Positions 5,309-124,000 of a DNA stretch of 124,000 bases are shown here, piece after piece. Where the stretch lies: the NCBI GenBank assembly GCA_951406725.2, contig OX597826.1:60160001-60284000 (forward strand), written 5' to 3'. Source of the DNA: Octopus vulgaris (taxonomy: Eukaryota). The first letter of the stretch is position 1; every line of letters starts with the position of its first letter. The translations under genes and the position numbers were made by a program. The notes beneath the pieces are model-generated. The model was not told where the DNA came from, made no database searches, and worked only from the letters and a program-made list of their open reading frames with translations.

Positions 5309-5384
<76 letters not shown>

Positions 5385-5388
<4 letters not shown>

Positions 5389-5583
5389 GTTAGCTACTGC
5401 ACGCATTTTTTTTCTCTCCTTCTTTCTGTGTTTTTCTCTCTCTGTGTATCTTTCTGTTGAAGAGCGTAGGCTCGAAACGTTAAAGACTTGTTTTATTTAT
5501 ATTTCCTGAGCGCCATACTAATACAATTGTTCGTTTGTTTTCCACCTGCCTTCGTCTTTTGTTTATTTTCATAAAGCTTCCCG

Positions 5584-5585
<2 letters not shown>
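5385..5585 (+). mobile_element. Short PLE-derived element with hammerhead-like motif (5450-5485)
   Basis: CTTT-CTGTTGA-A-GAGC(GTAG)GCTC-GAAA-CGTT-AAAG; flanked by (TA)n; near-identical to 39375-39545 and 111440-111650. Confidence 0.7.
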
Positions 5586-5680
<95 letters not shown>

Positions 5681-11889: not shown

Positions 11890-13129
11890 CTGTTATAAAA
11901 TACGCACAACCGCAACAATTGTGGAGTACTTATCTCTGTATTTCTACTCCTCTTTCGTTTTATATATACATATATATATATGCATACGTTATACATGCAC
12001 GTATGTGTGTGTTATACATGTATATATATGGTATAGATATGTATGTATTTGACTTGGCCTTTACCCTCAAAACGGCAGGCATTGTGCAAAATCTGAAGTA
12101 ATTCTTATCATCATAGAAACAGGCCCTAACACGGCGGACATCCACCAAAGATAATCGTTTCCACTCACAATATAAGTTCCCACACAAATTCCATGCATAC
12201 ATAAATCCCCAAAAGAATTTAACCAAAACATAAACGAAAATCACATTAAGGAAAACAAATGCGTATGAAACCATTTTTCCCTCAGCTCACACGAAACGCT
12301 TCACATATTGTACCACTACTCAAATTCAATTCTTACAAGAACACCAACCTGAAAACGTACACACATTTCCTATAATCTTTCCAGAAAACCTTTGTTGCCT
12401 TGCAGCATCACCCAATATGGTGTTTTGGTATGAAGAGACATAATTCCTAGCCCAACCATTGCGTGAATTGGTTAATCATCTTTTTTACAGCATCGAAACA
12501 CCGGATGTGTTTGTTGACATCCCAAAATAGAGCGCGGTCTCCATATTTCATTTCATATCTGCCATCTCTGAAGAGCGCAGTGTTACATGATCGGACTGTA
12601 ACCTAACACCTCGTTGAACCCCTAGTGCGAAATCCAACCTTAAGATCAGCCGTAATGGGTGTACACTAGTGTACACTTCGATTAATATGTATGTATATAT
12701 AAATATATATAATACATGCATACATATGTACATACCTTGATGTTGATGAAATTCCAATGTATATAGGCAATAACCTAGGCAAGAAATATTGAAATATGTC
12801 TGAATAATAACATTCATACTTACATACATACATATATTGTTATGGTATATTCTGTAAAGAACATAGGGGAGTACAGTATTGAGCTCATCCTCCTTCAGAT
12901 TTAGCCTGTGCCATCCAGCAGTAGTATTATACATACTTCCAGGTTTGCGTTTCGGCATATGTCTTGTTTGAATAGGTAATTAAAGAAAGTGGGAAACATT
13001 TACATAATGAAGCACTTGCACACCTGGAGAACTACGTTGCATGGAAACAAATGTAGTGCTTAAAAATGAAATGTCCAAACGTTGACTCTAATTTCTTAAA
13101 TTGCACATATATATATATATATATATATA

Positions 13130-13350
13130 CATATATAAAGTTAATCCAAACAAGAAAGCACAAAAAAAACACTACAACGCAAGGACGTGGAACACATATA
13201 GCATTATTGGACGCTCAGGAATGAAGGAAAGAAGGAGGGTTTAACGTTTCGAGCGGAGCTCTTCGTCGGAAACATAGGAGAAGGAAAGATCCAGAGAAGG
13301 GAAGACAGAGGATAAAAAATCACCAACGGTACACACGAGGTCACATTTTG
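13130..13350 (-). mobile_element. Short PLE-derived element with hammerhead-like motif (13239-13273)
   Basis: GTTT-CCGACGA-A-GAGC(TCC)GCTC-GAAA-CGTT-AAAC; (TA)n flanks. Confidence 0.6.
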
Positions 13351-13499: not shown

Positions 13500-14155
13500 G
13501 GATGTGTATGTGTGTGTGTTCTCCAACGTTCACTAGTGAACGATTGAGGAAATTGGGTCGCTCCCTCACATCCCTATCCATATTATAATTCCCTAGTATA
13601 TGGGGGAAACGAAAAATGAACGTCCTAATCATAGACATCACAAACGTGGTGAAATCGTGCCTCGATGTTGTTTTCGATATGTGTTGTGCACTGATAGTCT
13701 CTTCCAAACTGAAATCAGATGGAATTTCTTATGGAAGTGCAATTCCTATAAATCACTAGAAATGAAACAAGTCTTGTACACCGAAGCTGGTGCGGGGCGA
13801 AAGGCCTTGGGTATGGTAAGGAAGTACTGAATCGCAGCTACCCTGATGTATGTATAACAGTGAGGGTACAAATTTATGTGCAAGCTGCGCAGAAAATAAC
13901 CCAGTTAAGATGTATTTATATGAATATTAGAATCATTAAGTAACAGAACTTTGACAAGTATCTCATTTCCCATTGGCATTACAGATAAAGGTATGTAAAT
14001 AATTGTAAAAAGAGGATACAATTATATACACGGCATACACAGACGTCTCTCTCTTTCTATCTCTCTCTCTCTGTATATATATATATATATATATATATAG
14101 ATGAGAAAGTTGGTTTGTGAAAGCACGTGGTTGAATATATAGAATATATAGAATA

Positions 14156-14332
14156 TATAGAAAATAGTAAAAAGTGAAAAAACTACAGAAGGTCATTTCT
14201 TCTAAACTATGTCATTATAAGAAAGGAAAAAAAAAATTATAACATTCTTCAGACATATTGACTCAAATATATATTTTTTAACCTTTTAAAACAAGCCTTC
14301 TGTAGTTTTTTCACTTTTTACTATTTTCTATA
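14156..14332. mobile_element. MITE-like element with 37-bp perfect terminal inverted repeats
   Basis: 14156-14192 pairs with 14296-14332; TA-rich flanks. Confidence 0.65.
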
Positions 14333-14699
14333 AATATATATATATACACATATTTGCGTATGTATTGGGAGACGGGGATCCCTGTGTATGCATATATTTT
14401 CCAACTACCTGTCTTGTTTTTCACAATGTGTTGTTCTTATTCCCTCACAGTTCATCGCTTGTGTATGTTTCCGTTACCGTCCTTTACGGGCTTTGCTAAT
14501 GTTCGTACACTTGTCCCAGAAGGATTGGCTGTAGGTATTACTAGAACGAATAATACTATCGATAAACACGAGAAATCATGAAGAATTTTGGGTGATAATT
14601 GATGGTGCCTCATGTGAAAGGTTTCAGAGTATTCCTTTATTTGATCTTCTGTACATTGTTTCTTTTTTTACTATTACTGTATATATAAATATTTAAATA

Positions 14700-14920
14700 T
14701 ATTTCAAATTCTAACAACATGTGAATTGTTGACTAAGTTTTTCCCTACTTCTTCATTTTCTATTCGACTTTCCTCTCTCTCTCCTCTTTCTGAAGAAGAG
14801 CATTGCTCGAAAGGAAAAACCACCTTTCTTTCCTTCCCTGATCGTCTGCTAATATTTTACATGTACCACGTACTCATGTCGTTGTTTTTTTTGTGTTTGT
14901 TCTTGTTTTTTTTTTCTTGA
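14700..14920 (+). mobile_element. Short PLE-derived element, degenerate hammerhead (14786-14820)
   Basis: CTGAAGA-A-GAGC(ATT)GCTC-GAAA with a decayed stem III; similar to 31320-31520. Confidence 0.5.
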
Positions 14921-15272
14921 GGGTGGGATTTACTATATGTGTGTGTGTCTGTGTGTGGATCATATTGCTTTACAATTTTTACAAATCTTTATATTTATTT
15001 CAGATACACTTTCATATAAGTACGGTAAGCCGAGTTCACAGCACTTTTTATTCTTTGTATGAATGAAGGGTCCCTGTTGGCAATGAAAATGAATGAATTG
15101 TCATCATCGTCAACATTGTTTCATTTTTGTTTTCGTGGTTCTTGTCGTTCTTTTTCGTCTTCTTCGTTTTCTTCTTTTCGTCTTCCTCCACGTCCTCCAC
15201 GCCCCCCTTCATTTTCTCATTATCATTATTCTTATTACTTCTACTACTACTCACATTTCAATTGTTGACAGA

Positions 15273-19847: not shown

Positions 19848-20077
19848 AGGCGGCGAGCTGGCAGAAACGTTAGCACGCCGGGCGAAATGCTTAGCGGTAT
19901 TTCGTATGCCGCTAGGTTCTGAGTTCAAATTCCGCCGAGTTCAACTTTGCCTTTCATCCTTTCGGGGTCGATAAATTAAGTAACAGTTACGCACTGGGGT
20001 CGATATAATCGACTTAATCCGTGTGTTTGTTCTTGTTTGTCCTCTCTGTGTTTAGCCCCTTGTGGGTAGTAAAGAAA
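19848..20077 (+). mobile_element. tRNA-derived SINE family A
   Basis: AGGCGGCGAGCTGGCAGAA head with A/B-box-like motifs and a GCCTTTCATCCTTTCGGGGTCGATAAATTAAGTAC body. Confidence 0.85.
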
Positions 20078-21152
20078 TGGGTTAAGTATCTTGCTCTATA
20101 ACCATGCGATTTTGGGTTCAATCGCGCTCGTACGAAACCTTGAGCAACAATATTCTACAACACCAAGACGACCTAGGCCCCCGGAGCAAATTTAATAGAT
20201 GAAAACCCTATAGAATACCGTCATCTACACGCACACACGCACACTCACTACCATAAAAATGTGTGTTTATGTGTGTTTGTGTGTGTGTTTGCGTTCGTGT
20301 GCGTTCGTGTGTGAGTGTGTGTGTTTGTATGTGTGTGTACGTGTGTGCCTGTAAGTGAGACCGTGTTTGCTCGCCCACAGCTTAACAACCGGTTTTGATT
20401 TGTTTGCGTTCTCGCAGTTTAGACGTTCGGCAAGAGAAAGCGAAAAACTTCAGCATTACTAAAGTACTAGGTTTGATTTGTCCACCCCACAAACATTGAA
20501 GGGTATATCCCAGAATAACCGCATCCATTGACGGAAAATAGTGAAAGATAAAATATAAATTGTTATGTTACTATTAAACAAACTTTGCAGCAATTCGTTA
20601 AATAATGACGTACTGACCATAAAATTAAACGATGTCCGTTGATATCACAGTTCCTGATAAGCTCAAATTGTCCCTAAATGTTACTACATATCATTATTGT
20701 TAAATCTAAGCTTGCTTGCTTAGGTTTGACAATTTTTACATTATTGTTTACATAAAATTTTGGGAAGATCTGCAATTTTAAAAATATATAAAGAGTATGA
20801 TTAAATACCGATTTTTCATACCTCGTATGAGTAATTATTAACAGATAACTAAATGTCAACATTTTAAAATTTAAGAAGCATTTATTAGCATACTTAGAAA
20901 TGCGTAAGTGATGCGAAGAATATAATGCTAACTAATATTAAATAGTTTTATTTTATTTCTGATGACAGAATTCAAAATATGTGTGGTGATGAAATATGGC
21001 CGTAATACTGTTTTAGTAAACGTAGTCGAAAATATTCCATGGTACATTCGAATATATCGATTTCACTATTTATTCTATTTTCCTTCCGAACGATGAATGT
21101 CAAAATGAACCCGGTTGAGATTTCAAATGAGAAGGCTGTTTAACCAATATTT

Positions 21153-21382
21153 ATTTCTTTATTGCCCACAGGGGGCTAAACATAGACGGGACAAAGAAGG
21201 ACAGACAAACGGATTAAGTCGATTTTATCGACCCCAGTGCGTAACTGGTACTTAATTTATCGACCCCGAAAGGATGAAAGGCAAAGTCGACCTCGGCGGA
21301 ATTTGAACTCAGAACGTAACGACAAACGAAATACGGCTACGCATTTCGCCCGGGGTGCTAACGTTTCTGCCAGCTCGCCGCC
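21153..21382 (-). mobile_element. SINE family A
   Basis: Reverse complement of the family A consensus. Confidence 0.85.
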
Positions 21383-31319: not shown

Positions 31320-31516
31320 TATAAATGTAACCACATGTGAATCGCTGGTGATTTTCTTCCTTCGTCTTCGGTTCTTTTGGACTTTCCACTATTTCTGAAG
31401 AAGAGCTTTGCTCGAAACGTTAAAACCATCTTTCTTTCCTTCCCTGAGCGTCTTCTAACACATTACGTGTACCACGATCACGGGTTGCTGTTCCTTTTCA
31501 TGTCAATTCTTCTTTT

Positions 31517-31520
<4 letters not shown>
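31320..31520 (+). mobile_element. Short PLE-derived element with canonical-core hammerhead (31391-31425)
   Basis: TTT-CTGAAGA-A-GAGC(TTT)GCTC-GAAA-CGTT-AAA; (TA)n flanks. Confidence 0.6.
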
Positions 31521-31600
<80 letters not shown>

Positions 31601-39182: not shown

Positions 39183-39374
39183 TGCATGCGTGTATATGCG
39201 TGAAATCACTTGCATACATGTATACATGGACATGATATCACATAATGATGGTCGATTAATATTTTCAATATCCTAAGTTATTTGCAATAAATGTGGTTGC
39301 TCCAATCTTAGTTAACCGCGCTTAAAATGTGTACCATAAGTATGAAAACCCTTAAACCCCTGCGTATATATATA

Positions 39375-39543
39375 TATATTTTCTCTCCTTCTTTCTGTGT
39401 TTTTCTCTCTCTGTGTATCTTTCTGTTGAAGAGCGTAGGCTCGAAACGTTAAAGACTTGTTTTATTTATATTTCCTGAGCGCCATACTAATACAATTGTT
39501 CGTTTGTTTTCCACCTGTCTTCGTCTTTTGTTTATTTTCATAA

Positions 39544-39545
<2 letters not shown>
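39375..39545 (+). mobile_element. Short PLE-derived element with hammerhead-like motif (39419-39454)
   Basis: Near-identical to 5385-5585; (TA)n flanks. Confidence 0.7.
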
Positions 39546-39584
<39 letters not shown>

Positions 39585-45962: not shown

Positions 45963-46862
45963 TCTTTATATTGAGATATGAATATAAAATCATGTGTGTG
46001 GAGAACAACCTCACTTGAAACTGGAAGTGTTTTATGACAATCTGGCCAGTAAATCCATTATATACGCACACGTGTCTCATAAGCGTCTATCATTAATTGC
46101 CGGTAAGCTATTTTGATGCTAGTTTCTTGTCTGCTTTCTCTGAAGAGCAAACCAACATTCTGTTTTCTTGGAAACAGAAATAGAGAGAAGGCAGCAAGGC
46201 TTCTTTGTTGTAGCGCGCAGAGCGTCAAGTGTGTCCACGGATAATGAATTACCGTCACATTGTTCTGCTTCCGCAGCCACTAGTAACGGTTTCCAAGCCG
46301 ATGGAAGTAAGGAAGGTGAAATATCGTCAGGAGCAGTCATAATTTTACATGAATTCATTCAGCTACATGATTTGTTCATGCACCGTTGAAGTGCCGCGAG
46401 TACACAAGTGCTGACGTTTTGGATTTGCCATACATTTTGAATGCCATCCTGATCACAGTAAACAATATTTGGAGCAGGACATCTGTAATTTTAGCGCTAA
46501 CGGTGGTCATACTTGGTAATGAATCTACAACCACTCTATATTGGATATAAGCATAAAGTGAAGTTATGATATAGGAATGGGAAAAACTCATATTGTCAAA
46601 GACAGAAACATAGTGAGTTTCTTGACAGCCGACCGAGACAACAACAAAGTACACAACAATGAGAATATCATATAGAAGCTAATATATATAAACATGGTGA
46701 ATAAACAGGGTAAATAAAGGAAACGATGTTTAACAGCCAATTATGTCATCAGAGATGTATTGAGATGACGACGACGGTGAGGTGTACGTTATGTTGTATT
46801 GCTTCGTAATTGTCTCCTCATCCATCATATTAGGAAATTGATTAGTTGTGTAAAGAACTACA

Positions 46863-56500: not shown

Positions 56501-56535
56501 CTGATGAGAACCCATTTATGTTCGAAAATCGATTA
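56501..56535 (+). ncRNA. Minimal hammerhead-like motif
   Basis: CTGATGA-GAAC(CCATTTAT)GTTC-GAA-AATCGATT-A: intact core, stem II and palindromic stem III; stem I pairs poorly. Confidence 0.4.
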
Positions 56536-61469: not shown

Positions 61470-62300
61470 CTGTGCTATAAATGGAAGTGTAGTCAAATCC
61501 TATTTTATGAATTCAACCATAGCAAAAAATTCTATGCCCCCACACGGAGCATAGAAGTGCGGGTAAATGAGCATTGGAGGGAACTTAAGGAAGATAAGAG
61601 ATCATCGGTTCTGTACCAGCACGGGGGGCTCGCTCAACAACATAGAAGTTAAAATCTTCAACATACAACAGACGCAACGCTTAGACAAATTACAGAAGCT
61701 ACACACATAATAGAAGATAAACCTAGCCTGAATAGGAAGCTGGAATGGAATACTAGCACACACCCACAACACACCACAACATACGACAGAATGAGAGCCC
61801 CATAAACTAATAATAAAATGAGTATAATATAAACTATATACAGATAAACAAATGGAATTAAATAACTATATACGTTAACAAAATAAATTAAATTAATTAC
61901 AAAAAAGAAAGAATAGAAAAAATAAGTAGGTATAAACACATGAACAAAATAAATAAAGACAAATTAAATGAACGTGTATAAACAGGGGATAGTGCTAATA
62001 CAGCACATCTCCCTCCCCCCATACACACACACTTACTAAACATAGACAAACGTAAATAAAGACATATACAATAGGAATACAAAATGTCTGATCATTAGTA
62101 AGGTAAGACACAAAAAAGAAAGAAGAAAGCAAAGGACCACTGATGAGGTAACAGAAGTGTGACGAAAGAACTCTGGCCGAAATACGATTAATTCAAAAAT
62201 AAAACTGAAGCAAATAAACACCAAATATATAGTGCGTGTGTTCTTATTGGCTAAACTGGCAACGTGACTATACCCAAATACAACAATATATATATATATT
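61470..62300 (+). mobile_element. Penelope-like retroelement 3' fragment (GIY-YIG endonuclease remnant + UTR)
   Basis: Frameshifted translation ILFYEF...KFYAPTRSIEVRVNEHW...LYQH...LRQITEATHIIEDKPSLNR matches the PLE GIY-YIG pattern. Confidence 0.75.
62134..62178 (+). ncRNA. Minimal type I hammerhead in a PLE 3' region
   Basis: GGACCA-CTGATGA-G-GTAAC(AGAAGT)GTGAC-GAAA-GAAC-TC-TGGCC. It lies downstream of a GIY-YIG remnant; stems I and II each carry one mismatch. Confidence 0.55.
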
Positions 62301-69862: not shown

Positions 69863-69920
<58 letters not shown>

Positions 69921-69929
69921 TATGTCACC

Positions 69930-70120
69930 ATGATAGATCGTTAGCCACTACACACATTTTTTTCTCTCCTTGTTTCTTCTGTGTCCCTTTCTGTAGAAGA
70001 GCATAGGCTCGAAACGTAAAATACTTTTTCTATTCCTGAGCGTTATACTAATACATCTGTTTGCTTTATACACCGCCTGTCTTCGTTTTTTGTTGTTTTT
70101 TTTCGTAAACTCTCCCTATA
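69930..70120 (+). mobile_element. Short PLE-derived element with hammerhead-like motif (69987-70022)
   Basis: Close to the 42635-42825 copy. Confidence 0.65.
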
Positions 70121-79139: not shown

Positions 79140-79629
79140 GACAGACAGAGAATTCACAAAAAAGACAAAAGACGAAGACAGGTGGTGTAGACAACAAACA
79201 GATGTGATAGTTTAACGCTCGGGAAGTAAAAAAATGTCTTTAACGTTTCGAGCCTACGCTCTCCCACAAAAAGGAACACAAAGAGAAACAGAGAGAGAAA
79301 ATAAAGAATGTGTAGTGGCTTGGGTCTATCATGGCGAATGCCGGACAGAGGGGTTATACATGAGAGTTAGGAAGAAAGGGAGATAGAAAGAACCAAAAAG
79401 TTTAGAAAGTACAAAAAAGTTCTAAAACGTTGAAAAGCTTCAAAAGCTTCGTCGTGGTGTATTGGAGCGATTTCTCATCAACGGAAGAGTCCATTGTAAT
79501 CCATGGACAGGAGAGGTACAGCTGACGTGTTGGAGAGTAGAAAATCCAGGTAGAATAGTCCGAAGTGTAGAAGGTGTAGAAAATCCAAGAAAAGTTCATT
79601 GGGAGACAGGATCAACTGGTGCGACCACG

Positions 79630-104431: not shown

Positions 104432-105628
104432 TCATAGTCGGTTATTCTTTGATAAGATATTCTTAAAGTATTTCAGATGGAATTCTCTAGAAATGAAACT
104501 GATTTCCTGTTTTTGCGAAGTGCTAGGTTTAACTTTAACTTTTTTCGTGTATTTACAATGTGAGAAACACCGAAATATTGCGACTAATTCTTTACGAAAC
104601 TGTTTACTTGTAACTATATACCAGAGAAAATTCATGCTGTGGTGAGTTAGTGAAAGGAGTCGAAGGTATGAAAATGTTTTCGACGTTTTGTAACCGTCGT
104701 GGGAGACATCGTATAAAATATTTACCGAGACAGGTGTACATGTTAGGAAAAAAAATATGTTATTATAGACAACCATTCTAGTATTAGCGGATATCCGACG
104801 CCTTCGGGAATCTAAAGTACTTGTTTGACATAACAAAGGTCTAGAGAGTATCGTGCGTATAATCAGTACATTACATATCATCATAATAAGTGATGGAATG
104901 ATGCTGTGTAGGAATATACGTAGCCAGTTATCAAAATGTTCAACGAAGTAGAGATAATTTATGGAATTCAGAGTGCACTTGCCTAGTTCAAATAAATGTG
105001 ATTCGCTGGGAAAATCCAATGTGATGTTGCTTTTCGATTCGGTTACGTTGGCGTGTTTGCTAGAATAATTCTGGCTTATGTTGACTAGTAACAGTTGCTG
105101 CGACTTTGTCGTGTCCCCCATGCCAATGAGAAAATGGGAATCATACACTGCGAGTATTAAAAATGTTACTGTGATTTTGACTAAGCTAGCACGAGGATGG
105201 ATTTGAACGTGACTACTCAGTGGCTTAGTTACAAACAACATCTTCTCGAGGGATATGAGGACTAAATTCCAAGATGAGCAATCTATGAAATACGAAGAGA
105301 AGAATTGACCTGTTTTACATAAGAATTCATTCAGTTTTGTCACATGGATACCAAACGTGAATGCTAGCCATTTACGGAACAAGGTGCATATAACAGCCCC
105401 CATATCAACGGTAAGTTGAGATAAGAGGTAAATGTTAAGTCTTTGCACTTTCATCGATGATCGAGTGAGAATATACATAGAAATCATGTTACCTGAGAGT
105501 CCGAAAATCAGAAGAAATCCACCAAACCATATCCATAACCCGACAGCAACGACATTATCATGAATATATTGATCTAGTGTATCACTAGAAATTGTTTCTT
105601 TGTTGTTCAAGACAGCAGAGGAATCCAT
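104432..105628 (-). CDS. Intronless rhodopsin-like (class A) GPCR, 398 aa; orphan peptide-receptor-like (FMRFamide-receptor/GPR139-like invertebrate group)
   Basis: Only long non-repetitive ORF. The track starts at GTG 105652; the first ATG is 105628 (MDSSAVL). Seven hydrophobic segments with class A landmarks: GN in TM1 (GLSGNMIS), D2.50 (LTVD), Cys before TM3 (FLCK), SSWNLVLISLEKM (DRY position), ECL2 Cys (GKCT), P5.50 (IIPS), P6.50 (TCTP), NFLWY (NPxxY position), helix 8 SKQFRKEL. Confidence 0.93.
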   Translation of the reverse strand: MDSSAVLNNKETISSDTLDQYIHDNVVAVGLWIWFGGFLLIFGLSGNMISMYILTRSSMKVQRLNIYLLSQLTVDMGAVICTLFRKWLAFTFGIHVTKLNEFLCKTGQFFSSYFIDCSSWNLVLISLEKMLFVTKPLSSHVQIHPRASLVKITVTFLILAVYDSHFLIGMGDTTKSQQLLLVNISQNYSSKHANVTESKSNITLDFPSESHLFELGKCTLNSINYLYFVEHFDNWLRIFLHSIIPSLIMMICNVLIIRTILSRPLLCQTSTLDSRRRRISANTRMVVYNNIFFFLTCTPVSVNILYDVSHDGYKTSKTFSYLRLLSLTHHSMNFLWYIVTSKQFRKELVAIFRCFSHCKYTKKVKVKPSTSQKQEISFISREFHLKYFKNILSKNNRL

Positions 105629-106563
105629 ACTAGCTTTATTTTTTATGATCACTTATAGTTTTACAAAAATATATCGAACTAAATAATGGATTGTTACATA
105701 TAATACATGATTATACATAATTCTCAAACAACGGCTACTAATATCGAATCCAGTGTTGTTCGATTCGAGAATATTGATGATGCTGAAAAAGTTTCTGTCT
105801 TTTAAAAACGATTGTCGTTGTTGATGTAGGTACAGCTGCTGCTGCTGCTGCTGTGGTTGGTGTTGTTATTGACGTTTAGTTGCTGATCAATACTGAATGA
105901 AGAATACAAATGAGCAAGAGCATTAAAGCCGTGAATATGCTAGTCTTTTCATTTGTGTTTATTTGATTTCCCTATTGTGTTCTGTGTGAATTTTCTTTCA
106001 ATCTCTTACTTTAGAGCGTTAATGCATGGATTAAGACGGATATACATGCTATATCAGCGATAGGGTGATATCAACAGGAGGGTCTCTTCCTTTAGAATTG
106101 CTACCCTTTTTGTCAGGTTCCCCAGTTCAGTGAGTAACAAAGAGAAATCACATGCCGCAACGGAATTGGTATCAAGAATGCCATATTACATCATGAAGTG
106201 CCGAGAATATACTTCTGTCATTAAGACGTGTTTTTGTTTCATTGAACAAGATGTTTCAACAAATTCGAGTTTCTTCTTCGATTGGATACACACGTCTTTT
106301 ACTACAGATTTGGGACGCACATGAATTATCTTCTCCTTGAGAAAAGAACCTTAAGTGGGATTCATATGACCAGTCTCAAAGTTATGCTTTTCTTGCTGAT
106401 ACGAAGTCACCTCCTAAAACCAAAAAGAAAGAAAAGAAATTGCATCAATATACATATACGCATATATAGCACTATATACATGCATGAGTGCGTTTGTGTG
106501 AGTGTTTATGTTTAAGTAGTGATATAATGAATATTCCATGTGTGTATACTAAACATACATACA

Positions 106564-107649: not shown

Positions 107650-108399
107650 ATATAATTAATCAATATAGGGTGGCAAAAAAATTCGCAGAATTTTTTTGCC
107701 ACCAGCGGCCTAGTGGGAAAAAAATTAAATAGTCATAGACCATTTATAAATTCAACAGCAAAATCAAGGAACGGCCATAATAGACCATTCACCCACTAGA
107801 AATAACAGCCAAGGCTTCAACCGCAAAACAACATTAATTCCATAAACCAGGAGAAAATTAAAAAAACATTTACCCTGTAATTCTTTATACGATGCACCGT
107901 TTCTTCTATTGTTTAATGGTAAACTAACCTGATTAAATTAAATCAAGCTAGTCTTCCATAGGCCGATAGAATCGTCAGTAAAGAACAGCCAGATCGGAGC
108001 AGATATTTACACGAGGCACTTCTACTACTGTCTCGGCAATATCTGACCTAAAATGTTCAAATCATCGCACTCGCGCCAAATTTACCGGCAGCAAATATAA
108101 GCCGCCGATTCCATTACGGAATTAACCAGAAAATTCATAATTAATCAATATAGGGTGGCAAAAAATTTCACAGAATTTTCTTGCCACCAGCGGCCTAGTG
108201 GGAAAAAATTGATTTAATTTAATCAGGTTAGTTTACCATTAAACAATAGAAGAAACGGTGCATCGTATAAAGAATTACAGGGTAAATGTTTTTTTAATTT
108301 TCTCCTGGTTTATGGAATTAATGTTGTTTTGCGGTTGAAGCCTTGGCTGTTATTTCTAGTGGGTGAATGGTCTATTATGGCCGTTCCTTGATTTTGCTG
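107650..108399. mobile_element. Rearranged hairpin-ended element (Helentron/MITE-like) with a 191-bp perfect inversion
   Basis: GGTGGCAAAAAAATTCGCAGAATTTTTTTGCCACC hairpin present twice; 107756-107946 is the reverse complement of 108209-108399. Confidence 0.75.
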
Positions 108400-108936
<537 letters not shown>

Positions 108937-111384: not shown

Positions 111385-111402
111385 CTCTCTCTCTCTCTCT
111401 CT

Positions 111403-111439
<37 letters not shown>

Positions 111440-111443
<4 letters not shown>

Positions 111444-112485
111444 CGGGAAGCTTTATGAAAATAAACAAAAGACGAAGGCAGGTGGAAAACAAACGAACAA
111501 TTGTATTAGTATGGCGCTCAGGAAATATAAATAAAACAAGTCTTTAACGTTTCGAGCCTACGCTCTTCAACAGAAAGATACACAGAGAGAGAAAAACACA
111601 GAAAGCAGGAGAGAAAAAAAATGCGTGCAGTAGCTAACGAATCAACATGGCGATCTGATTTCGGCCAGAGGTCAAAGATCAAACATGAGACGCGAGAGCG
111701 AAATAAGGGGAGATAATAGGGTTGATAAAAGGGTTGAGGGACCAGCTAATAGTGCGTAGGAGGGGTCTGGATGTGTGTATGTATAGGGTTGGTGTATGTA
111801 TTAGTATGTATAAGGGTGTCTGTGTGTGTGTGTGTGTGTGTGTGTATGAGAGAGTATTAGTGCGTAGGATTGGTCTGGACGTGCGTATGTATGGGGTTGG
111901 TGTATGTATTAGTATGTATTAGTATGTATTAGTACGTATTGGTATGTATAAGTGTGTGTGTGTGTGTATGAGAGAGTATAAGTGCGTATGCGGGGTCTGG
112001 ACGTGTGTATGTATAGGGTTGGTGTATGTATTAGTATGTACTAGTATGTATTAGTACGTATTAGTATGTATTAGTTGGCGTGTGTATTAGTATGGCACAT
112101 CATATGTGATGTGATGTGTAAAGTCATGTGGTGTAGTGAGGAGAAGAGGGGGAGGGGAGAAGAGGGGGGAGAGAAGGGGAGGGGAAGAATAGGGGGAGGA
112201 GAGGATGGGGGAGGAGGGGGATGAAGGAGGAAAGAGGAAGAGGGAGAGAGAAGGGGAGAGAGAGAAGGGGAGAGAGAGAAGGGGAGAGAGGGAGTGAGGG
112301 AGCAGAGGGAAGGGGAAGAGGGAGGGAGAAAGAGGGAAGAAGGGAAGGGGAGTAGGGGTGAAAGGATGAAGGACTGAAGAAGTAGGGGTCGGGGGTAAAG
112401 GATAGGTGAGGAGGGCGGAGAGGGGGGTTAGATGAGGAGGGGGGGAGAGTTGAGACCAAATGGCGTATAAGAGCGAATATATATA
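111440..112485 (-). mobile_element. PLE 3' end: endonuclease C-terminal stub, CT-rich UTR, hammerhead (111542-111577)
   Basis: The minus strand at ~112485 reads YIRSYTPFGLN (TLxPxGLN-like). It is followed by a polypyrimidine tract, three tandem ~110-130 bp units and the same hammerhead unit as 5385-5585. Confidence 0.55.
112135..112452 (+). repeat. Purine-rich G/A tract
   Basis: About 320 bp of almost only G and A with many G3-G6 runs. Confidence 0.85.
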
Positions 112486-119009: not shown

Positions 119010-119135
119010 TTGAAACATTGGTAACTGCTCATATTCCTAAAAAAAACAGCTTGTTCATGTCATTATATGCATGTGCTATCAGCTATGTATATGCTTGCAT
119101 ACATATGTATATACGTACATACACACACATGTATA

Positions 119136-119166
<31 letters not shown>

Positions 119167-119253
119167 GTAAATATCTATATATATATATACATACTTATAT
119201 ATATATATACATATATATATATATGTAAATATCTATATATATATACATACATA

Positions 119254-119293
<40 letters not shown>

Positions 119294-119296
119294 TCC

Positions 119297-119344
<48 letters not shown>

Positions 119345-119389
119345 GTATATATATATGGATATTTACATATATATATATTTATATATACA

Positions 119390-119423
<34 letters not shown>

Positions 119424-119612
119424 AGTATGTATGTATATATATATATAGATATTTATATATATATATATATATATATATAAATATATATATACATGTGTGT
119501 GTATGTACGTATATACGTATGTATGCAAGCATGTACATACATGATAGCACATGCATATAATGACATGAACAAGCTGTTTCTTTAGGAATATGAGGAGTTA
119601 CCAATGCTTCAA
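119010..119612. repeat. Inverted repeat (~130-bp arms) around an AT-rich loop
   Basis: TTGAAACATTGGTAACTGCTCATATTCCTAAA...CAGCTTGTTCATGTCATT is mirrored at ~119475-119612. Confidence 0.8.
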
Positions 119613-120046: not shown

Positions 120047-120903
120047 CATATATATATATACATATGTACATATATATACACATATACATACATATATAAA
120101 TATATGTGTGTGTTTGTGTGTGTGCGTGCGCGTGTGGACATATTTATAATTGCATCCACAGATGCAATTATCTGACGCCTTGGTATATACGCTCTATTAC
120201 TACTGGATTACCGAAACACTTAAGAGTTCGATATCCCAACACTTTGTCCTCAGCATCACCCATATTAACACCTACAACTCCCCTCACGCAAAACCTACAC
120301 AAACACCTCAGCGGCACACATGCGCACAATACACCTTTGCTCAAAACAATACGAAAGTTCGATCTCTTAACGAATATCAATACCGGAGTTAAAAGCCTCC
120401 TAAAAGGGTCTTTAAAAGACTCCTAATGACAGTCTTTGTCCTGGTAAGGGATTTGTTATTGCAGAAGACCTTTCCGTTAATCTTTATTCTGGTCTTGTAA
120501 CATTTACAGTTATAGTCCCAAACACTATGTACGTATGTATCGATATATATATATGTATGTAAGTATGCATGCATACGCACACAGAAACACACCCACACAT
120601 ATACCTATGTTCACATGTACCAACATACATATATGCACATATATTTATGCAACGATATACGTGCATACTTATACTTCTTATTAAACCATATTAAATGTTT
120701 CTTGACGGAAAGTACTAAGGTACTGAGTTACTTGCATTATAGATAATAGCAGCGAGTTCGTTTTATGTACGCGTATATGCACGCGAAATTATGTAATTAA
120801 ACACACAAACTCACACATATATGTATGTATGCTCTCTCTATATACGTGTGTGTTTGTGTGTGTGTGTTTGTGTGTGTGTGTATGTGTGTATCTATATATA
120901 TAC

Positions 120904-120952
<49 letters not shown>

Positions 120953-120987
120953 GGTCCCAGAGTAAATTAATTTATTTTATAGAAGGA

Positions 120988-121036
120988 GCTTCTACAGGAC
121001 TAGAACTGTTTCATTCAAAAGAAATCATCAGGAAGC
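120988..121036 (-). ncRNA. Type I hammerhead ribozyme candidate (inverted copy)
   Basis: Exact reverse complement of 122238-122286. Confidence 0.7.
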
Positions 121037-121805
121037 AAGTAGACAAGAGTTGTTTTGGTATTTATACATTTAGGCAGGTTTAAATGGGTTGTGGTGGGGG
121101 ACTTTTTTGGGGGTAGGCATGGCGCAAAACTGTCATTATTAGGGGAGTGGTCAAAGGAATCGGTGGTAAAGTAGATAAAAGAATAAATAAAAGAATAAAA
121201 AATAAAAATAAAAATAAAAGTAAAAATAAATATAAATATAAATGTGTGCATGTGTATATATGTATGAGTGTATATGTGTATGTATATGTATATGAATGTA
121301 TATGTGTATATATATATGTATATATATGTGTATATGTGTATGTATATGTATGTATGTGTATGTATGTGTACATGTATATGTGTATATATATTAATTAGTG
121401 TATATGTATGGACTAGTCTTATGTGGGTGTGTTGAGGTATGTATGTGTATGCGTGTATGTGAATATACGTGAATGTATGTAGATGTAGGCGTGTATGAAT
121501 ATAACTTGTGCGTGAGTGTACGTGTGGATGTGTGGGCGTGAGTAAGTGCTTGCGTTCGTATCAGTAAGTAGATAGAATAACAGAACCTTTAGAGATCCCT
121601 TGGGACAAGTTTGACCGGTCAAGATAAAAATAAAGATATAAACAAAAGTAGTTAATAAAATTAAAATAAGAGAATAAAGATGTGTGTGTATGTGCGTGCA
121701 TGTATATGCATATGTATATATATGTGCGAGTGGGTATACATATGTGTATGTATGTGTATGTGTTTGTGTATCTGTGTGTACGTACATGAGTATGTGTAGA
121801 TATAT

Positions 121806-121837
<32 letters not shown>

Positions 121838-122237
121838 ATGTGTATGTGTACGTATGTATGTGTATATATATATGTATGTATATGTGGGTATGTATGTATA
121901 TGTATAGATATATGTGAATAGGCGGGTGTGTATATGTGTATGTGTATATATATATATGTAGATGTACAAGTGAGAGTCTCCCCACTTACCTAAAACTTTT
122001 CTATTTATATTTTTTTATATATTTTTTGTTTTAATATTTATATTTATTTTTATTTATTTATTTATTTTTTTATTTTTATTCTTTTATTTATTCTTTTACC
122101 TACTTTACCACCGATTCCTTTGACCACTCCCCTAATAATGACAGTTTTGCGCCATGCCTACCCCCAAAAAAGTCCCCCCCCACCACCCATTTAAACCTGC
122201 CTAAATGTATAAATACCAAAACAACTCTTGTCTACTT

Positions 122238-122286
122238 GCTTCCTGATGATTTCTTTTGAATGAAACAGTTCTAGTCCTGTAGAAGC
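122238..122286 (+). ncRNA. Type I hammerhead ribozyme candidate
   Basis: GCTTC-CTGATGA-T-TTC(TTTT)GAA-T-GAAA-CAG(TTCTAGTC)CTG-TA-GAAGC. All three stems pair and the cleavage triplet is GUA; 10.1-11.1 is U-U instead of R-Y. Confidence 0.7.
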
Positions 122287-122599
122287 TCCTTCTATAAAAT
122301 AAATATATATATATATATATATATATAGTAATACTAATATTACTAGAATTTACCGTATAACGGTCCTGGTTTCATACCGAATTCTATTTGGTGAAATTTA
122401 TTGATTACTTCGTAATTAATTAGTTTTACCCTTAATTGCTATATATATATGGTTTCACATGAAATGTCGCATTTCTAATTATTTGTTATTTCAATCATTT
122501 AAAAACTCAATGATGTATACTATTGTATTTAAAGTTGACTCTTTTTTTCTTTCCCAGTAATATTGGAATACAAAATTCGTCCCCACAGACCTTATGAAA

Positions 122600-122785
122600 A
122601 TGATAACAACCAAATAGCTGTTGAATGATTTTCTCGTATGAGTACATACTGGGTCACCCTGCTGCAGAGGCTCTACAGAATATCAAGCGGGTCTTTCTTA
122701 ATGGCTTTGTTGACATCAGAACTTTTCAGAGAAGGTTCCAAAATTTTCGTTCAGGTGGTGATAGCCTTGAAAATAAACCAAGGAT
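122600..122785 (+). mobile_element. Mariner transposase N-terminal remnant
   Basis: IFSYEYILGHPAAEA...DIRTFQRRFQNFRSGGDSLENKPR resembles the mariner HTH region. Confidence 0.75.
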
Positions 122786-122829
122786 AATTAAAGGTGTTAC
122801 ATTCCTACTTCCAAAACATGAAGAAACAT

Positions 122830-123760
122830 ATTAACCAAAGATTTATCGACCCATAACCTGCTTAACAGCAATGTATAAAGTACTAACATCTGTCTTGACT
122901 GAATATACTTATAGTTTTTTAATGGAAAGTGGCATGTTCGTTAATGAGCAAGAAGGATGTAAACGTGGGTCCTGTGGTTGTAAAGATCAGCTACTCATCA
123001 ATTAGATGATCTTAGGAGATAGTAACAAACGACACAAGTTGTCGATAGACTGGATAGACTATATAAAATACTCTTGATAGTCTACTATGTAGCTGGATTA
123101 AGAAATGTATAAAATCGTACCTACTGTAAATATGAGACCTACACTGACTTACAAATATGAGAACTACACTGACTTTCAACAGTGACAATGAATCTCTCAA
123201 TGTTGGAGATGTAAGAAATGCAAGTGGCATTTTCCAGGGAGACTTTCTATCATTATTCGTCTTTTGTCTAGCCTTAATACCCCTCTCGAAATTGCTCGAT
123301 GATGTACAATATGGCTATAAAATATTATATCTGATAACATCTCTTTTACACGGTTGAATTAAAGTACTTTGCAAAAATGATCAACAACTACTGGGTTTAC
123401 TAGCATTTATTAAGTAATACAGTGATTACACCAGGATGCAATTTGGCTTCGATAAACGTACAAAAGTTACCTTTATGAAAGTAAAAATGATAGCAACATC
123501 CAACGTTAATATTGACCAACAGAACGTCATAAAGGAACAAGAAACAGGGGAGAGCTACAAATACCTAGGGGTATTTGAAGGTGATGAAATCAAACATGCA
123601 ACGATGGAGGAAATGATCAGAAAAGCATGTTTTCCTAGGGTAAGAGCAATACTTAAGACAGCGTTAAATATAAGAAACAGGATCGAAGCGATAAATATTT
123701 TAACCATACCAGTCGTGCCTTACAGTTTCAATATCATTAAGTGGTGTATTACTGAAATAT
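122830..123760 (+). pseudogene. Non-LTR reverse transcriptase remnant (R4-like)
   Basis: GIFQGDFLSLFVFCLALIPL, MQFGFDK, YKYLGV motifs with stops and frameshifts. Confidence 0.85.
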
Positions 123761-123769
123761 GTAATCTTA

Positions 123770-124000
123770 TTTATTTGTTGCCCACAAGGGGCTAAACATT
123801 GAGGGGACAAACAAGGACAGACAAAGGGATTAAGTTGATTACATCGACTCCAGTGCGTAACTGGTACTTAATTTATCGACACCGAAAGGGTGAAAGGCAA
123901 AGTCGCCCTCAGCGGATTTTGAACTCAGAAAGTAACGGCAGACGAAATACCGCTAAGCATTTCGCCCGGCGTGCTAACGTTTCTGCCAACTCGCCGCCTT
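123770..124000 (-). mobile_element. SINE family A
   Basis: Reverse complement of the family A consensus. Confidence 0.85.

What the first reader, a model, noticed from the sequence alone, without database searches (positions are those of the whole stretch)
120971..122303. Back-to-back hammerhead ribozymes in a ~245-bp inverted repeat
Seen: a three-stem type I hammerhead (stem I GCTTC/GAAGC, CUGAUGA, stem II TTC/GAA, GAAA, stem III ACAG/CTGT, GUA cleavage site after 122281) on + at 122238-122286 and its exact inverse on - at 120988-121036. Both sit near the outer ends of near-identical inverted arms. Unusual: U-U at 10.1-11.1 and a full-length stem III, unlike the minimal PLE hammerheads elsewhere in the window. 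Known: PLEs and retrozymes carry hammerheads, and PLEs form inverted pseudo-LTRs. Inference: a transcript from either strand would self-cleave near its 3' end and could fold into a long hairpin (dsRNA/ADAR or small-RNA substrate). This may be a recent non-autonomous ribozyme-ended retroelement family.
Basis: partly seen in the sequence, partly recalled or inferred. Interest (0 to 1): 0.85.

Follow-up and report, generated by a model that had tools for sequence, protein, structure and literature searches.

The report
Hammerhead-like motifs in octopus inverted repeat
A young 1.35-kb inverted-repeat insertion in an octopus (TA)n microsatellite carries a complete but weakly paired hammerhead-ribozyme motif near each outer end; it looks like an ordinary head-to-head insertion of a Penelope-type retroelement fragment, and neither cleavage nor a wider family could be shown.

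Summary
Arms 120970-121242 and 122031-122304 are inverted copies, with 3 substitutions in about 205 non-repetitive bp. Each carries the same 49-nt motif 18 nt from its outer end, pointing outward. The motif has every hammerhead core base, a GUA cleavage triplet and helices of 5, 3 (plus U.U) and 4 bp.

A descriptor that lax is expected 0.004-0.04 times per 124 kb, so it is uncommon. The fold is marginal: -5.7 kcal/mol against an MFE of -6.0. No Rfam hammerhead model matches it, but none matches the window's clear minimal hammerheads either.

In a transcript spanning the whole element, all 49 nt pair with the other arm, so self-cleavage and the long hairpin exclude each other.

The window is from an Octopus species. 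It holds about 8 copies of (TA)n-flanked short elements with Penelope-type minimal hammerhead boxes. The target's layout matches published Penelope-like element (PLE) insertions: head-to-head copies, 3' ends outward, motif near the 3' end, (TA)n on both sides, a 20-nt extension at one end and no ORF.

No other copy was found anywhere, so covariation and PLE ancestry remain untested. Best reading (about 0.5): a PLE-type inverted insertion of a low-copy, hammerhead-bearing non-autonomous element. Main rival (about 0.33): a chance motif in another kind of inverted repeat. Interest is modest.

The parts
120917..120949 (.). Left flanking (AT)n microsatellite, part of a TG/TA-rich tract that starts near 120840
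   Evidence: Read directly. (TA)n tracts of >=6 units cover 5.1% of the window.
120950..120969 (.). 20-nt unique stretch GTAGGTCCCAGAGTAAATTA between the left (AT)n and the left arm, with no counterpart at the right end. It is either a one-sided 'tail' of the insertion or target DNA.
   Evidence: alignment of the two ends.
120970..121242 (-). Left arm. The motif-sense strand is -, so its 3' end is the outer end at 120970.
120988..121036 (-). Hammerhead-like motif, left copy. The predicted cleavage lies between 120993 and 120992.
120980..120994 (.). Terminal palindrome TAGAAG-GAG-CTTCTA, mirrored at 122280-122294. As RNA it forms a 6-bp hairpin that competes with helices I and III of the motif.
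   Evidence: MFE of the 97-nt context.
121175..121242 (+). A-rich (AAAAT)-like inner part of the left arm, mirrored as a T-rich tract at 122031-122098.
121243..122030 (.). 788-bp spacer that is not palindromic. It consists of TG/TA microsatellite-like blocks (121243-121400 and 121681-121960) and unique sequence (about 121400-121680). It holds no credible ORF, no third arm copy and no complement of the termini.
122031..122304 (+). Right arm. The motif-sense strand is +, and its 3' end is the outer end at 122304.
122238..122286 (+). Hammerhead-like motif, right copy. Helix I is 122238-42 / 122282-86. The CUGAUGA box is 122243-49. Helix II is 122250-61 (U.U plus 3 bp and a UUUU loop). GAA is 122262-64. 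Helix III is 122265-80 (4 bp, with the 8-nt loop UUCUAGUC). A17 is 122281.
122305..122327 (.). Right flanking (AT)n microsatellite

Best explanation
The window comes from an Octopus genome. The feature is one recent insertion into a (TA)n tract. It consists of two inverted copies of the ~270-bp 3' end of a non-coding retroelement, placed head-to-head with their 3' ends outward. This is the arrangement that Penelope-like elements (PLEs) and their non-autonomous derivatives produce.

Each copy inherits a type I hammerhead-type motif about 20 nt from its 3' end, as part of the element's sequence. The motif has a perfect core but weak helices, so it is probably a poor self-cleaver as a monomer, or none at all.

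It could act only in transcripts that contain a single arm. In a read-through transcript it is locked into a ~270-bp arm-arm duplex.

Shown here: the inverted repeat, the motif, the (TA)n flanks, the lack of an ORF, the young age, and the presence of other hammerhead-bearing short elements in the same window.

Inferred: PLE ancestry, the retrotransposition mechanism, and any cleavage.
For: - The full hammerhead core, the GUA triplet and three helices sit in canonical type I order. Helix II has the canonical size of 4 positions plus a tetraloop.
- Such a motif is expected only 0.004-0.04 times per 124 kb, yet it lies in the 0.4% of the window occupied by these arms, 18 nt from the outer end and pointing outward.
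- Both ends of the insertion abut (TA)n, which covers only 5% of the window.
- One end carries a 20-nt extension, and no target-site duplication is discernible.
- The element holds no ORF beyond low-complexity artefacts.
- The same window holds about 8 copies of (TA)n-flanked ~230-bp elements with PLE-type minimal hammerhead boxes.
- A second inverted-repeat element at 107656-108402 is a lineage-specific insertion into a TA-rich microsatellite tract that O. bimaculoides has uninterrupted.
- Literature, PMC8557442: PLE insertions are 5'-truncated, often have an inverted truncated copy that forms flanking inverted repeats, favour (TA)n, carry a tail at one end only, and have hammerheads near the 3' end.
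- Literature, PMC4209133: dual hammerheads occur on opposite strands 100-700 bp apart.
- Literature, PMC7229834: a U.U mismatch at the base of helix II occurs in the axolotl HHR_Amex2 motifs, a group of about 60,000.
- Literature, PMC13282606: PLEs were recently active in O. vulgaris.
Against: - No Rfam hammerhead family matches, even at E<=10 on 96 nt. This weighs little, because the window's clear minimal hammerheads are missed as well.
- G10.1-C11.1, highly conserved in PLE hammerheads (PMC4209133), is replaced by U.U.
- Helix II alone has a free energy of -0.1 kcal/mol. The hammerhead fold is only 4.9% of the ensemble for the 49-mer and 0.05% in a 97-nt context. The z-score of the region is -0.02.
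- No RT/GIY-YIG sequence is present and no similarity to any PLE could be tested.
- No other copy was found anywhere, so there is no covariation evidence.
- The 788-bp spacer is not the 'immediately adjacent' inverted copy that is described for PLEs.
- Each arm's inner A-rich tract could be read instead as the tail of an element running in the opposite orientation.
Confidence: 0.5

Rival explanations
1. The inverted repeat is something unrelated to ribozymes, and the hammerhead-like string is a coincidence copied once when the repeat formed. It could be an internally deleted long-TIR DNA transposon or foldback/MITE-like element inserted at TA, or a local inverted duplication.
For: - The arms are symmetrical to within 2 nt in length and share the same outer end.
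- Tc1/mariner elements are the most numerous recently active DNA transposons in O. vulgaris (PMC13282606) and target TA.
- A mariner fragment lies 300 bp away, and a small TA-flanked MITE-like inverted repeat is at about 14150-14340.
- The motif is thermodynamically marginal, lacks G10.1-C11.1 and matches no curated model.
- Over an octopus-sized genome, the 0.004-0.04 per-window expectation means roughly 100-900 chance motifs (scaled to the genome; inference).
Against: - For a chance motif to fall inside these arms, near the outer end and facing outward, costs about a further 1e-3.
- No target-site duplication is present.
- The left end has 20 nt with no inverted counterpart if both (TA)n tracts are the target.
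- No IR-DR-type internal repeats occur in the arms.
- There is no transposase remnant.
- Hammerhead-bearing elements are demonstrably common in this window.
Confidence: 0.33
2. Two copies of a short non-LTR retroposon (SINE or LINE 3' end) have their A-rich (AAAAT)n tails facing inward. In this reading the element's sense strand is the opposite one, and the hammerhead-like string lies on the antisense strand and is meaningless.
For: - Each arm ends on the inside in a 65-bp A-rich simple-repeat tract, like a retroposon tail.
- Two copies of a common octopus SINE form a similar chance inverted repeat at 19849-20078 / 21153-21382.
Against: - The arms are 98.5% identical, yet no third copy exists in 145 kb. 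Two independent insertions 0.8 kb apart are therefore very unlikely.
- No tRNA, 5S or 7SL head is detected.
- Both outer ends stop at the same base, which fits defined 3' ends better than 5' truncations.
Confidence: 0.07
3. The inversion is an assembly artefact, from a fold-back or chimeric long read or a mis-join inside microsatellites.
For: - The region is packed with microsatellites.
- The differences between the arms cluster in a G-run and in the A-rich repeat, which are typical long-read error sites.
- PLE-type structures are known to trouble assemblies (PMC8557442).
Against: - The 788-bp spacer is not palindromic, unlike fold-back read artefacts.
- The arm sequence occurs nowhere else in the window to be mis-joined from.
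Confidence: 0.05

Closest known systems
Hammerhead motifs in the pseudo-LTRs of Penelope-like elements, including inverted 5'-truncated copies (Cervera & de la Pena 2014, PMC4209133; Craig et al. 2021, PMC8557442)
   Same: Hammerhead boxes lie near the 3' end of the repeated unit. The copies are head-to-head and form flanking inverted repeats. Hammerheads occur on opposite strands a few hundred bp apart. Insertion is into (TA)n, with an extension at one end and no clear target-site duplication.
   Different: No RT/GIY-YIG ORF or PLE sequence similarity is shown. Helix III is full (4 bp, 8-nt loop) rather than minimal. U.U replaces the highly conserved G10.1-C11.1. There is no bulged base after A9. 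A 788-bp non-homologous spacer lies between the copies.
Metazoan non-LTR retrozymes with type I hammerheads (Cervera & de la Pena 2020, PMC7229834; Li et al. 2026 preprint, 10.64898/2026.07.22.740005)
   Same: The unit is non-coding, AT-rich and a few hundred bp long, with one type I hammerhead. Invertebrate motifs have a more stable helix III. Axolotl HHR_Amex2 has the same U.U at the base of helix II.
   Different: Retrozymes are head-to-tail tandem repeats that give circular RNAs. Here the two units are inverted and no tandem copy exists.
The minimal-hammerhead short elements of this same window (F1 at 31323-31545, 14701-14925 and 13114-13348; F2 at 5381-5640, 39350-39560, 111390-111650 and others)
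   Same: They are (TA)n-flanked, non-coding and about 230-270 bp long, and carry CUGANGA...GAAA boxes.
   Different: There is no sequence similarity. In F1/F2 the motif sits mid-element, lacks helix III (palindromic ACGU), and has a bulged A and a G10.1-C11.1 pair. F1/F2 have many copies in the window, against a single pair here.
Long-TIR Tc1-like (IR-DR) deletion derivatives, foldback elements and MITEs
   Same: They have ~200-300-bp terminal inverted repeats around a non-coding core and insert at TA-rich sites.
   Different: No TA duplication, no internal direct repeats in the arms, a 20-nt asymmetry at one end, and no transposase remnant.

Membership tests
Hammerhead ribozyme (type I) | Conserved core C3 U4 G5 A6 N7 G8 A9 / G12 A13 A14 / A15.1-U16.1 / H17 | tested here: met
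   All positions are present: CUGAUGA, GAA, A15.1-U16.1 and A17, giving a GUA triplet.
Hammerhead ribozyme (type I) | Three helices around the core, with helix I open | tested here: met
   Helix I is 5 bp, helix II is 3 bp plus U.U with a tetraloop, and helix III is 4 bp with an 8-nt loop. Helix I cannot be extended (reading).
Hammerhead ribozyme (type I) | G10.1-C11.1 pair at the base of helix II | tested here: not met
   The motif has U.U. A natural precedent exists in axolotl HHR_Amex2 (PMC7229834), but the pair is listed as highly conserved in PLE hammerheads (PMC4209133).
Hammerhead ribozyme (type I) | Match to curated covariance models (the Rfam hammerhead families) | tested here: not met
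   No hammerhead hit at gathering score on the window, nor at E<=10 on 2.3 kb or on 96 nt. The same test also misses the window's minimal hammerheads, so it discriminates poorly.
Hammerhead ribozyme (type I) | The fold is favoured, or at least accessible | tested here: inconclusive
   The hammerhead fold scores -5.7 against an MFE of -6.0 kcal/mol and makes up 4.9% of the ensemble, falling to 0.05% with flanks. The z-score is -0.02. The motif is fully sequestered in a whole-element transcript.
Hammerhead ribozyme (type I) | Compensatory changes in the helices among homologues | not testable with these tools
   The only two copies are identical over the 49 nt, and no other copy was found.
Hammerhead ribozyme (type I) | Site-specific self-cleavage | not testable with these tools
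   This needs in vitro transcription or RNA end mapping.
Penelope-like element insertion (autonomous or derived) | RT plus GIY-YIG endonuclease ORF | tested here: not met
   The only ORFs are low-complexity microsatellite artefacts. The element could therefore only be a 5'-truncated or non-autonomous copy.
Penelope-like element insertion (autonomous or derived) | Pseudo-LTRs: tandem and/or inverted 5'-truncated copies with 3' ends outward | tested here: met
   Inverted copies are present, with the motif-sense 3' ends outward. No tandem copy exists.
Penelope-like element insertion (autonomous or derived) | Microsatellite, especially (TA)n, target with an unclear target-site duplication and a tail at one end | tested here: met
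   (AT)n lies on both sides and the left end has a 20-nt extension. That the 20 nt is a tail, rather than target DNA, is inference.
Penelope-like element insertion (autonomous or derived) | Sequence homology of the repeat to the end of an RT-encoding PLE | not testable with these tools
   No octopus PLE library or genome was searchable, and the window holds no PLE ORF.
Non-LTR retrozyme | Head-to-tail tandem repeats, each with a hammerhead | tested here: not met
   The only copies are inverted. There is no direct repeat of the arm.
TIR DNA transposon / MITE | Terminal inverted repeats reaching both ends, flanked by a target-site duplication | tested here: inconclusive
   The inverted repeat is present, but no TA, TTA or TTAA duplication fits either boundary choice, and the left end is asymmetric by 20 nt if both (TA)n tracts are the target.
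DIRS-like retroelement | Internal complementary region matching the outer tips of the inverted repeats | tested here: not met
   The best internal matches to the tips score no better than shuffles.

The most novel reading that the evidence does not exclude
The arms represent a new, recently active octopus family of non-autonomous PLE-derived elements. Its hammerhead has a stable helix III and a U.U base in helix II and cleaves as a monomer. Its head-to-head insertions create ~270-bp perfect hairpin RNAs, in which ribozyme folding and dsRNA formation (ADAR or small-RNA substrates) compete.
Probability: 0.12. Interest if true: 0.45.

Novelty: new member of a known kind. Interest (0 to 1): 0.3.

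Why it matters
If the motif is genuine, it adds a cephalopod example of a hammerhead-bearing, (TA)n-targeting non-autonomous retroelement. Its ribozyme layout (full helix III, U.U at 10.1-11.1) differs from the minimal PLE hammerheads abundant in the same genome.

It would also be a natural case where a ribozyme and a long dsRNA hairpin compete on one transcript, in an animal with heavy A-to-I editing.

It changes no concept. Hammerheads in PLE repeats, opposite-strand pairs and inverted PLE insertions are all published. If the motif is a coincidence, the locus is an ordinary young inverted repeat.

Tried and rejected
- **Rfam.** Nothing at gathering score on the whole window. E-value mode on 2.3 kb and on 96 nt gave no hammerhead, only microsatellite-driven miRNA look-alikes. 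The same test on the 62140 and 31395 motifs also gave no hammerhead, so I treated Rfam as uninformative for PLE-type motifs.
- **More copies in local sequence.** BLAST and nhmmer of the arm, spacer and flanks against the window and 21 kb of O. bimaculoides found none.
- **More copies through protein collections.** Arm translations in three frames found none in the 5.8-billion and 1.84-billion protein collections.
- **More copies through DNA pattern scans.** The metagenome scan gave 3 unrelated chance hits. The viral and prokaryote-genome scans gave none.
- **Orthologous empty site.** Synteny with O. bimaculoides CM046613.1 runs to window 120837 and then enters a mariner-like internal sequence at the edge of the fetched locus. 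This is inconclusive, and no neighbouring gene allowed me to walk further.
- **Third internal or tandem copy.** None.
- **DIRS-type internal complementary region.** None.
- **IR-DR repeats in the arms.** Only one 13-nt pair, at chance level.
- **tRNA or SINE head.** None.
- **First whole-window Markov simulation.** It timed out and was replaced by a simulation conditional on the core box.

Full report
**What is there**

The sequence at 122238-122286 (+) reads GCUUC / CUGAUGA / U-UUC-UUUU-GAA-U / GAA / ACAG-UUCUAGUC-CUGU / A / GAAGC. Its exact reverse complement is at 120988-121036 (-).

This is a type I hammerhead layout. All core bases are present, the triplet is GUA, and A17 is at 122281 on + and 120993 on -. 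Helix I has 5 bp. Helix II has 3 bp above a U.U and is closed by a tetraloop. Helix III has 4 bp, and its 8-nt loop is centred on the palindrome CUAG.

The two copies lie 18 nt inside the outer ends of an inverted repeat with arms 120970-121242 and 122031-122304. The tools report 264 nt at 94% and 274 nt at 96.4%. In the ~205-bp non-repetitive part, the arms differ by 3 substitutions. The inner ~65 bp is an A-rich (AAAAT)-like tract with different unit numbers in the two arms.

The 788-bp spacer is not palindromic and consists of TG/TA microsatellite blocks plus unique sequence. The only ORFs are low-complexity artefacts.

(AT)n abuts the right arm directly. On the left, (AT)n is separated from the arm by 20 unique nt.

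**Is it more than chance?**

I used a descriptor as permissive as this motif needs. It finds only these two sites in 248 kb of strand, and they represent one event, because the arms are copies of each other.

A simulation conditional on the CUGANGA box, with the window's dinucleotide statistics, gives an expected 0.004 per window for helices of 5/3/4 bp. The figure is 0.014 for 5/3/3 and 0.039 for 4/3/3.

So the motif is uncommon in one window. Across a genome of about 2.7 Gb (my knowledge of octopus genome sizes), this still predicts roughly 100-900 chance motifs.

What adds weight is where the motif sits. It lies in the 0.4% of the window taken up by the arms, next to their outer ends and facing outward.

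**Ribozyme quality**

- No Rfam hammerhead family matches, either at gathering score or at E<=10 on 2.3 kb and on 96 nt.
- The 66-nt region folds no better than shuffles (z = -0.02), and its MFE is not the hammerhead.
- The hammerhead structure scores -5.7 kcal/mol against an MFE of -6.0, which is 4.9% of the ensemble.
- With natural flanks, the share drops to 0.05%. A tip hairpin (TAGAAG/CUUCUA) takes the 3' strand of helix I.
- Helix II alone contributes -0.1 kcal/mol.
- G10.1-C11.1 is described as highly conserved in PLE hammerheads (PMC4209133), and it is replaced here by U.U.
- Two precedents soften this. U.U at the base of helix II occurs in the axolotl HHR_Amex2 motifs, a group of about 60,000 (PMC7229834). 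GUA triplets occur in natural hammerheads (PMC1636495, abstract).

The Rfam negative carries little weight, because the window's unmistakable minimal hammerheads are missed too.

**The hairpin idea**

A transcript of the whole element folds with 262 of 272 left-arm bases paired to the right arm. Every one of the 49 motif bases is in that duplex, at -87 kcal/mol against -5.7 for the ribozyme fold.

Self-cleavage and the long hairpin are therefore alternatives, not a sequence of events. Cleavage is conceivable only in transcripts that carry one arm.

**Context**

The window is from an Octopus species. A single-exon GPCR at 104432-105652 (-) is 90% identical to O. bimaculoides LOC106869549. The window is collinear with CM046613.1 as far as 120837.

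Beyond that point, the O. bimaculoides locus runs into mariner-like internal sequence and then ends. The empty or filled state of the target site therefore could not be read.

- **Family F1** (31323-31545, 14701-14925, 13114-13348) carries UUUCUGAAGA-A-GAGC-UUU-GCUC-GAAACGUU. It has the bulged base after A9, the G10.1-C11.1 pair and the palindromic ACGU that Cervera and de la Pena (PMC4209133) list for PLE minimal hammerheads.
- **Family F2** (5381-5640, 39350-39560, 111390-111650, 79150-79340, 69900-70110) has CUGUUGA or CUGUAGA as its first box.
- In both families, the copies whose ends I read mostly abut TA-rich microsatellite.

A second inverted-repeat element at 107656-108402 sits between two long (TA)n tracts. 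O. bimaculoides has an uninterrupted TA-rich microsatellite at that site.

So this lineage has mobile elements that target (TA)n, and some of them carry hammerhead boxes or form inverted repeats.

**Comparison with the literature**

Craig et al. (PMC8557442) describe PLE insertions as:

- 5'-truncated;
- often with an inverted 5'-truncated copy that creates flanking inverted repeats;
- biased toward (TA)n, so that target-site duplications are unreadable;
- carrying a tail at one end only;
- with hammerheads near the 3' ends.

Cervera and de la Pena (PMC4209133) report dual hammerheads on opposite strands 100-700 bp apart. PLEs were recently active in O. vulgaris (PMC13282606).

The target matches this picture in orientation, flanks, asymmetry and lack of coding capacity. 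It does not match in three respects: the form of the hammerhead (full helix III, no bulge, U.U), the 788-bp spacer, and the absence of any demonstrable PLE sequence.

**Alternatives**

- **A long-TIR DNA element or a local inverted duplication with a chance motif.** This remains plausible. Tc1/mariner elements and MITE-like elements are present nearby. However, no target-site duplication, IR-DR repeats or transposase remnant was found.
- **Two retroposons with inward A-rich tails.** This is unlikely, given 98.5% identity and no third copy.
- **A DIRS-like element.** Not supported.
- **An assembly artefact.** It cannot be excluded without reads, but the non-palindromic spacer argues against it.

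**Family search**

No other copy was found in:

- the window or the 21 kb of O. bimaculoides;
- two very large protein collections, queried with three reading frames of the arm;
- metagenome, viral and prokaryote DNA scans.

None of these collections gives a searchable octopus genome, so this absence says little about copy number. Covariation, the key test, could not be run.

**Verdict**

- About 0.5: a PLE-type head-to-head insertion of a low-copy, hammerhead-bearing non-autonomous element, whose motif is at best a weak ribozyme.
- About 0.33: a chance motif in another kind of inverted repeat.
- The remaining 0.17: the two minor rivals above (0.12) and explanations not listed here.

This would be a new member of a known kind, of modest interest.

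Noticed in passing
window 31323-31545 (+), 14701-14925 (+), 13114-13348 (-): Family F1: short elements of about 230 bp with a PLE-type minimal hammerhead (UUUCUGAAGA-a-GAGC-UUU-GCUC-GAAACGUU|AAAACC). Two copies abut TA-rich microsatellite at both ends, and 14701-14925 does so only upstream. The core is intact only in the 31395 copy. The copies are about 72-73% identical. The 13114 and 14701 copies face each other head-to-head, 1.35 kb apart. Rfam does not detect them.
   Followed up: partly
window 5381-5640 (+), 39350-39560 (+), 111390-111650 (-), 79150-79340 (-), 69900-70110 (+): Related family F2. Three copies are nearly identical (young). The first hammerhead box reads CUGUUGA or CUGUAGA (A6 replaced), followed by a-GAGC-GUAG-GCUC-GAAACGUU. 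This would be a core change expected to impair catalysis in an apparently recently amplified subfamily.
   Followed up: partly
window 107656-108402: A second inverted-repeat element lies between two long (TA)n tracts. Its arms are 107742-107946 / 108209-108413 (205 nt, 98%). It also has a ~70-nt direct repeat (107656-107727 and 108140-108209) that contains a 16-bp hairpin GGTGGCAAAAAAATTC/GAATTTTTTTGCCACC. O. bimaculoides has an uninterrupted TA-rich microsatellite here, so this is a lineage-specific insertion. It has no hammerhead boxes.
   Followed up: partly
window 19849-20078 / 21153-21382, 123780-124000 and 108518-108930: Copies of common octopus SINE-like repeats. The first two form a 91% inverted repeat simply because they were inserted in opposite orientation. 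This shows that inverted repeats of 200-nt arms also arise here by chance from abundant repeats.
   Followed up: no
window 104432-105652 (-): Single-exon rhodopsin-family GPCR (7tm_1 / Srw-like), 90% identical to O. bimaculoides LOC106869549. It identifies the window as Octopus, though not as that species.
   Followed up: yes
window 122625-122790 (+) and 122790-123800 (+): A mariner-type transposase N-terminus (Pfam HTH_48, E = 2.7e-10) is cut off by what looks, on reading, like a reverse-transcriptase-type element (no Pfam match). In O. bimaculoides, the collinear sequence jumps from window ~120837 straight into mariner-like internal sequence.
   Followed up: partly
window 14150-14340: A small MITE-like element of about 190 bp with ~35-bp terminal inverted repeats (…AAAAGTGAAAAAACTACAGAAGG / CCTTCTGTAGTTTTTTCACTTTTT…) in a TA-rich context.
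   Followed up: no
window 56501-56527 (+), 62140-62177 (+), 46140-46174 (+): Further CUGANGA...GAAA strings with a 3-4-bp helix II but no convincing helix I. They have no Rfam support and are likely degenerate copies or chance.
   Followed up: partly
window 119040-119583: A TA-rich microsatellite scores as a 272-nt inverted repeat with no spacer (89%). This is the self-complementarity of (TA)n, not an element.
   Followed up: no
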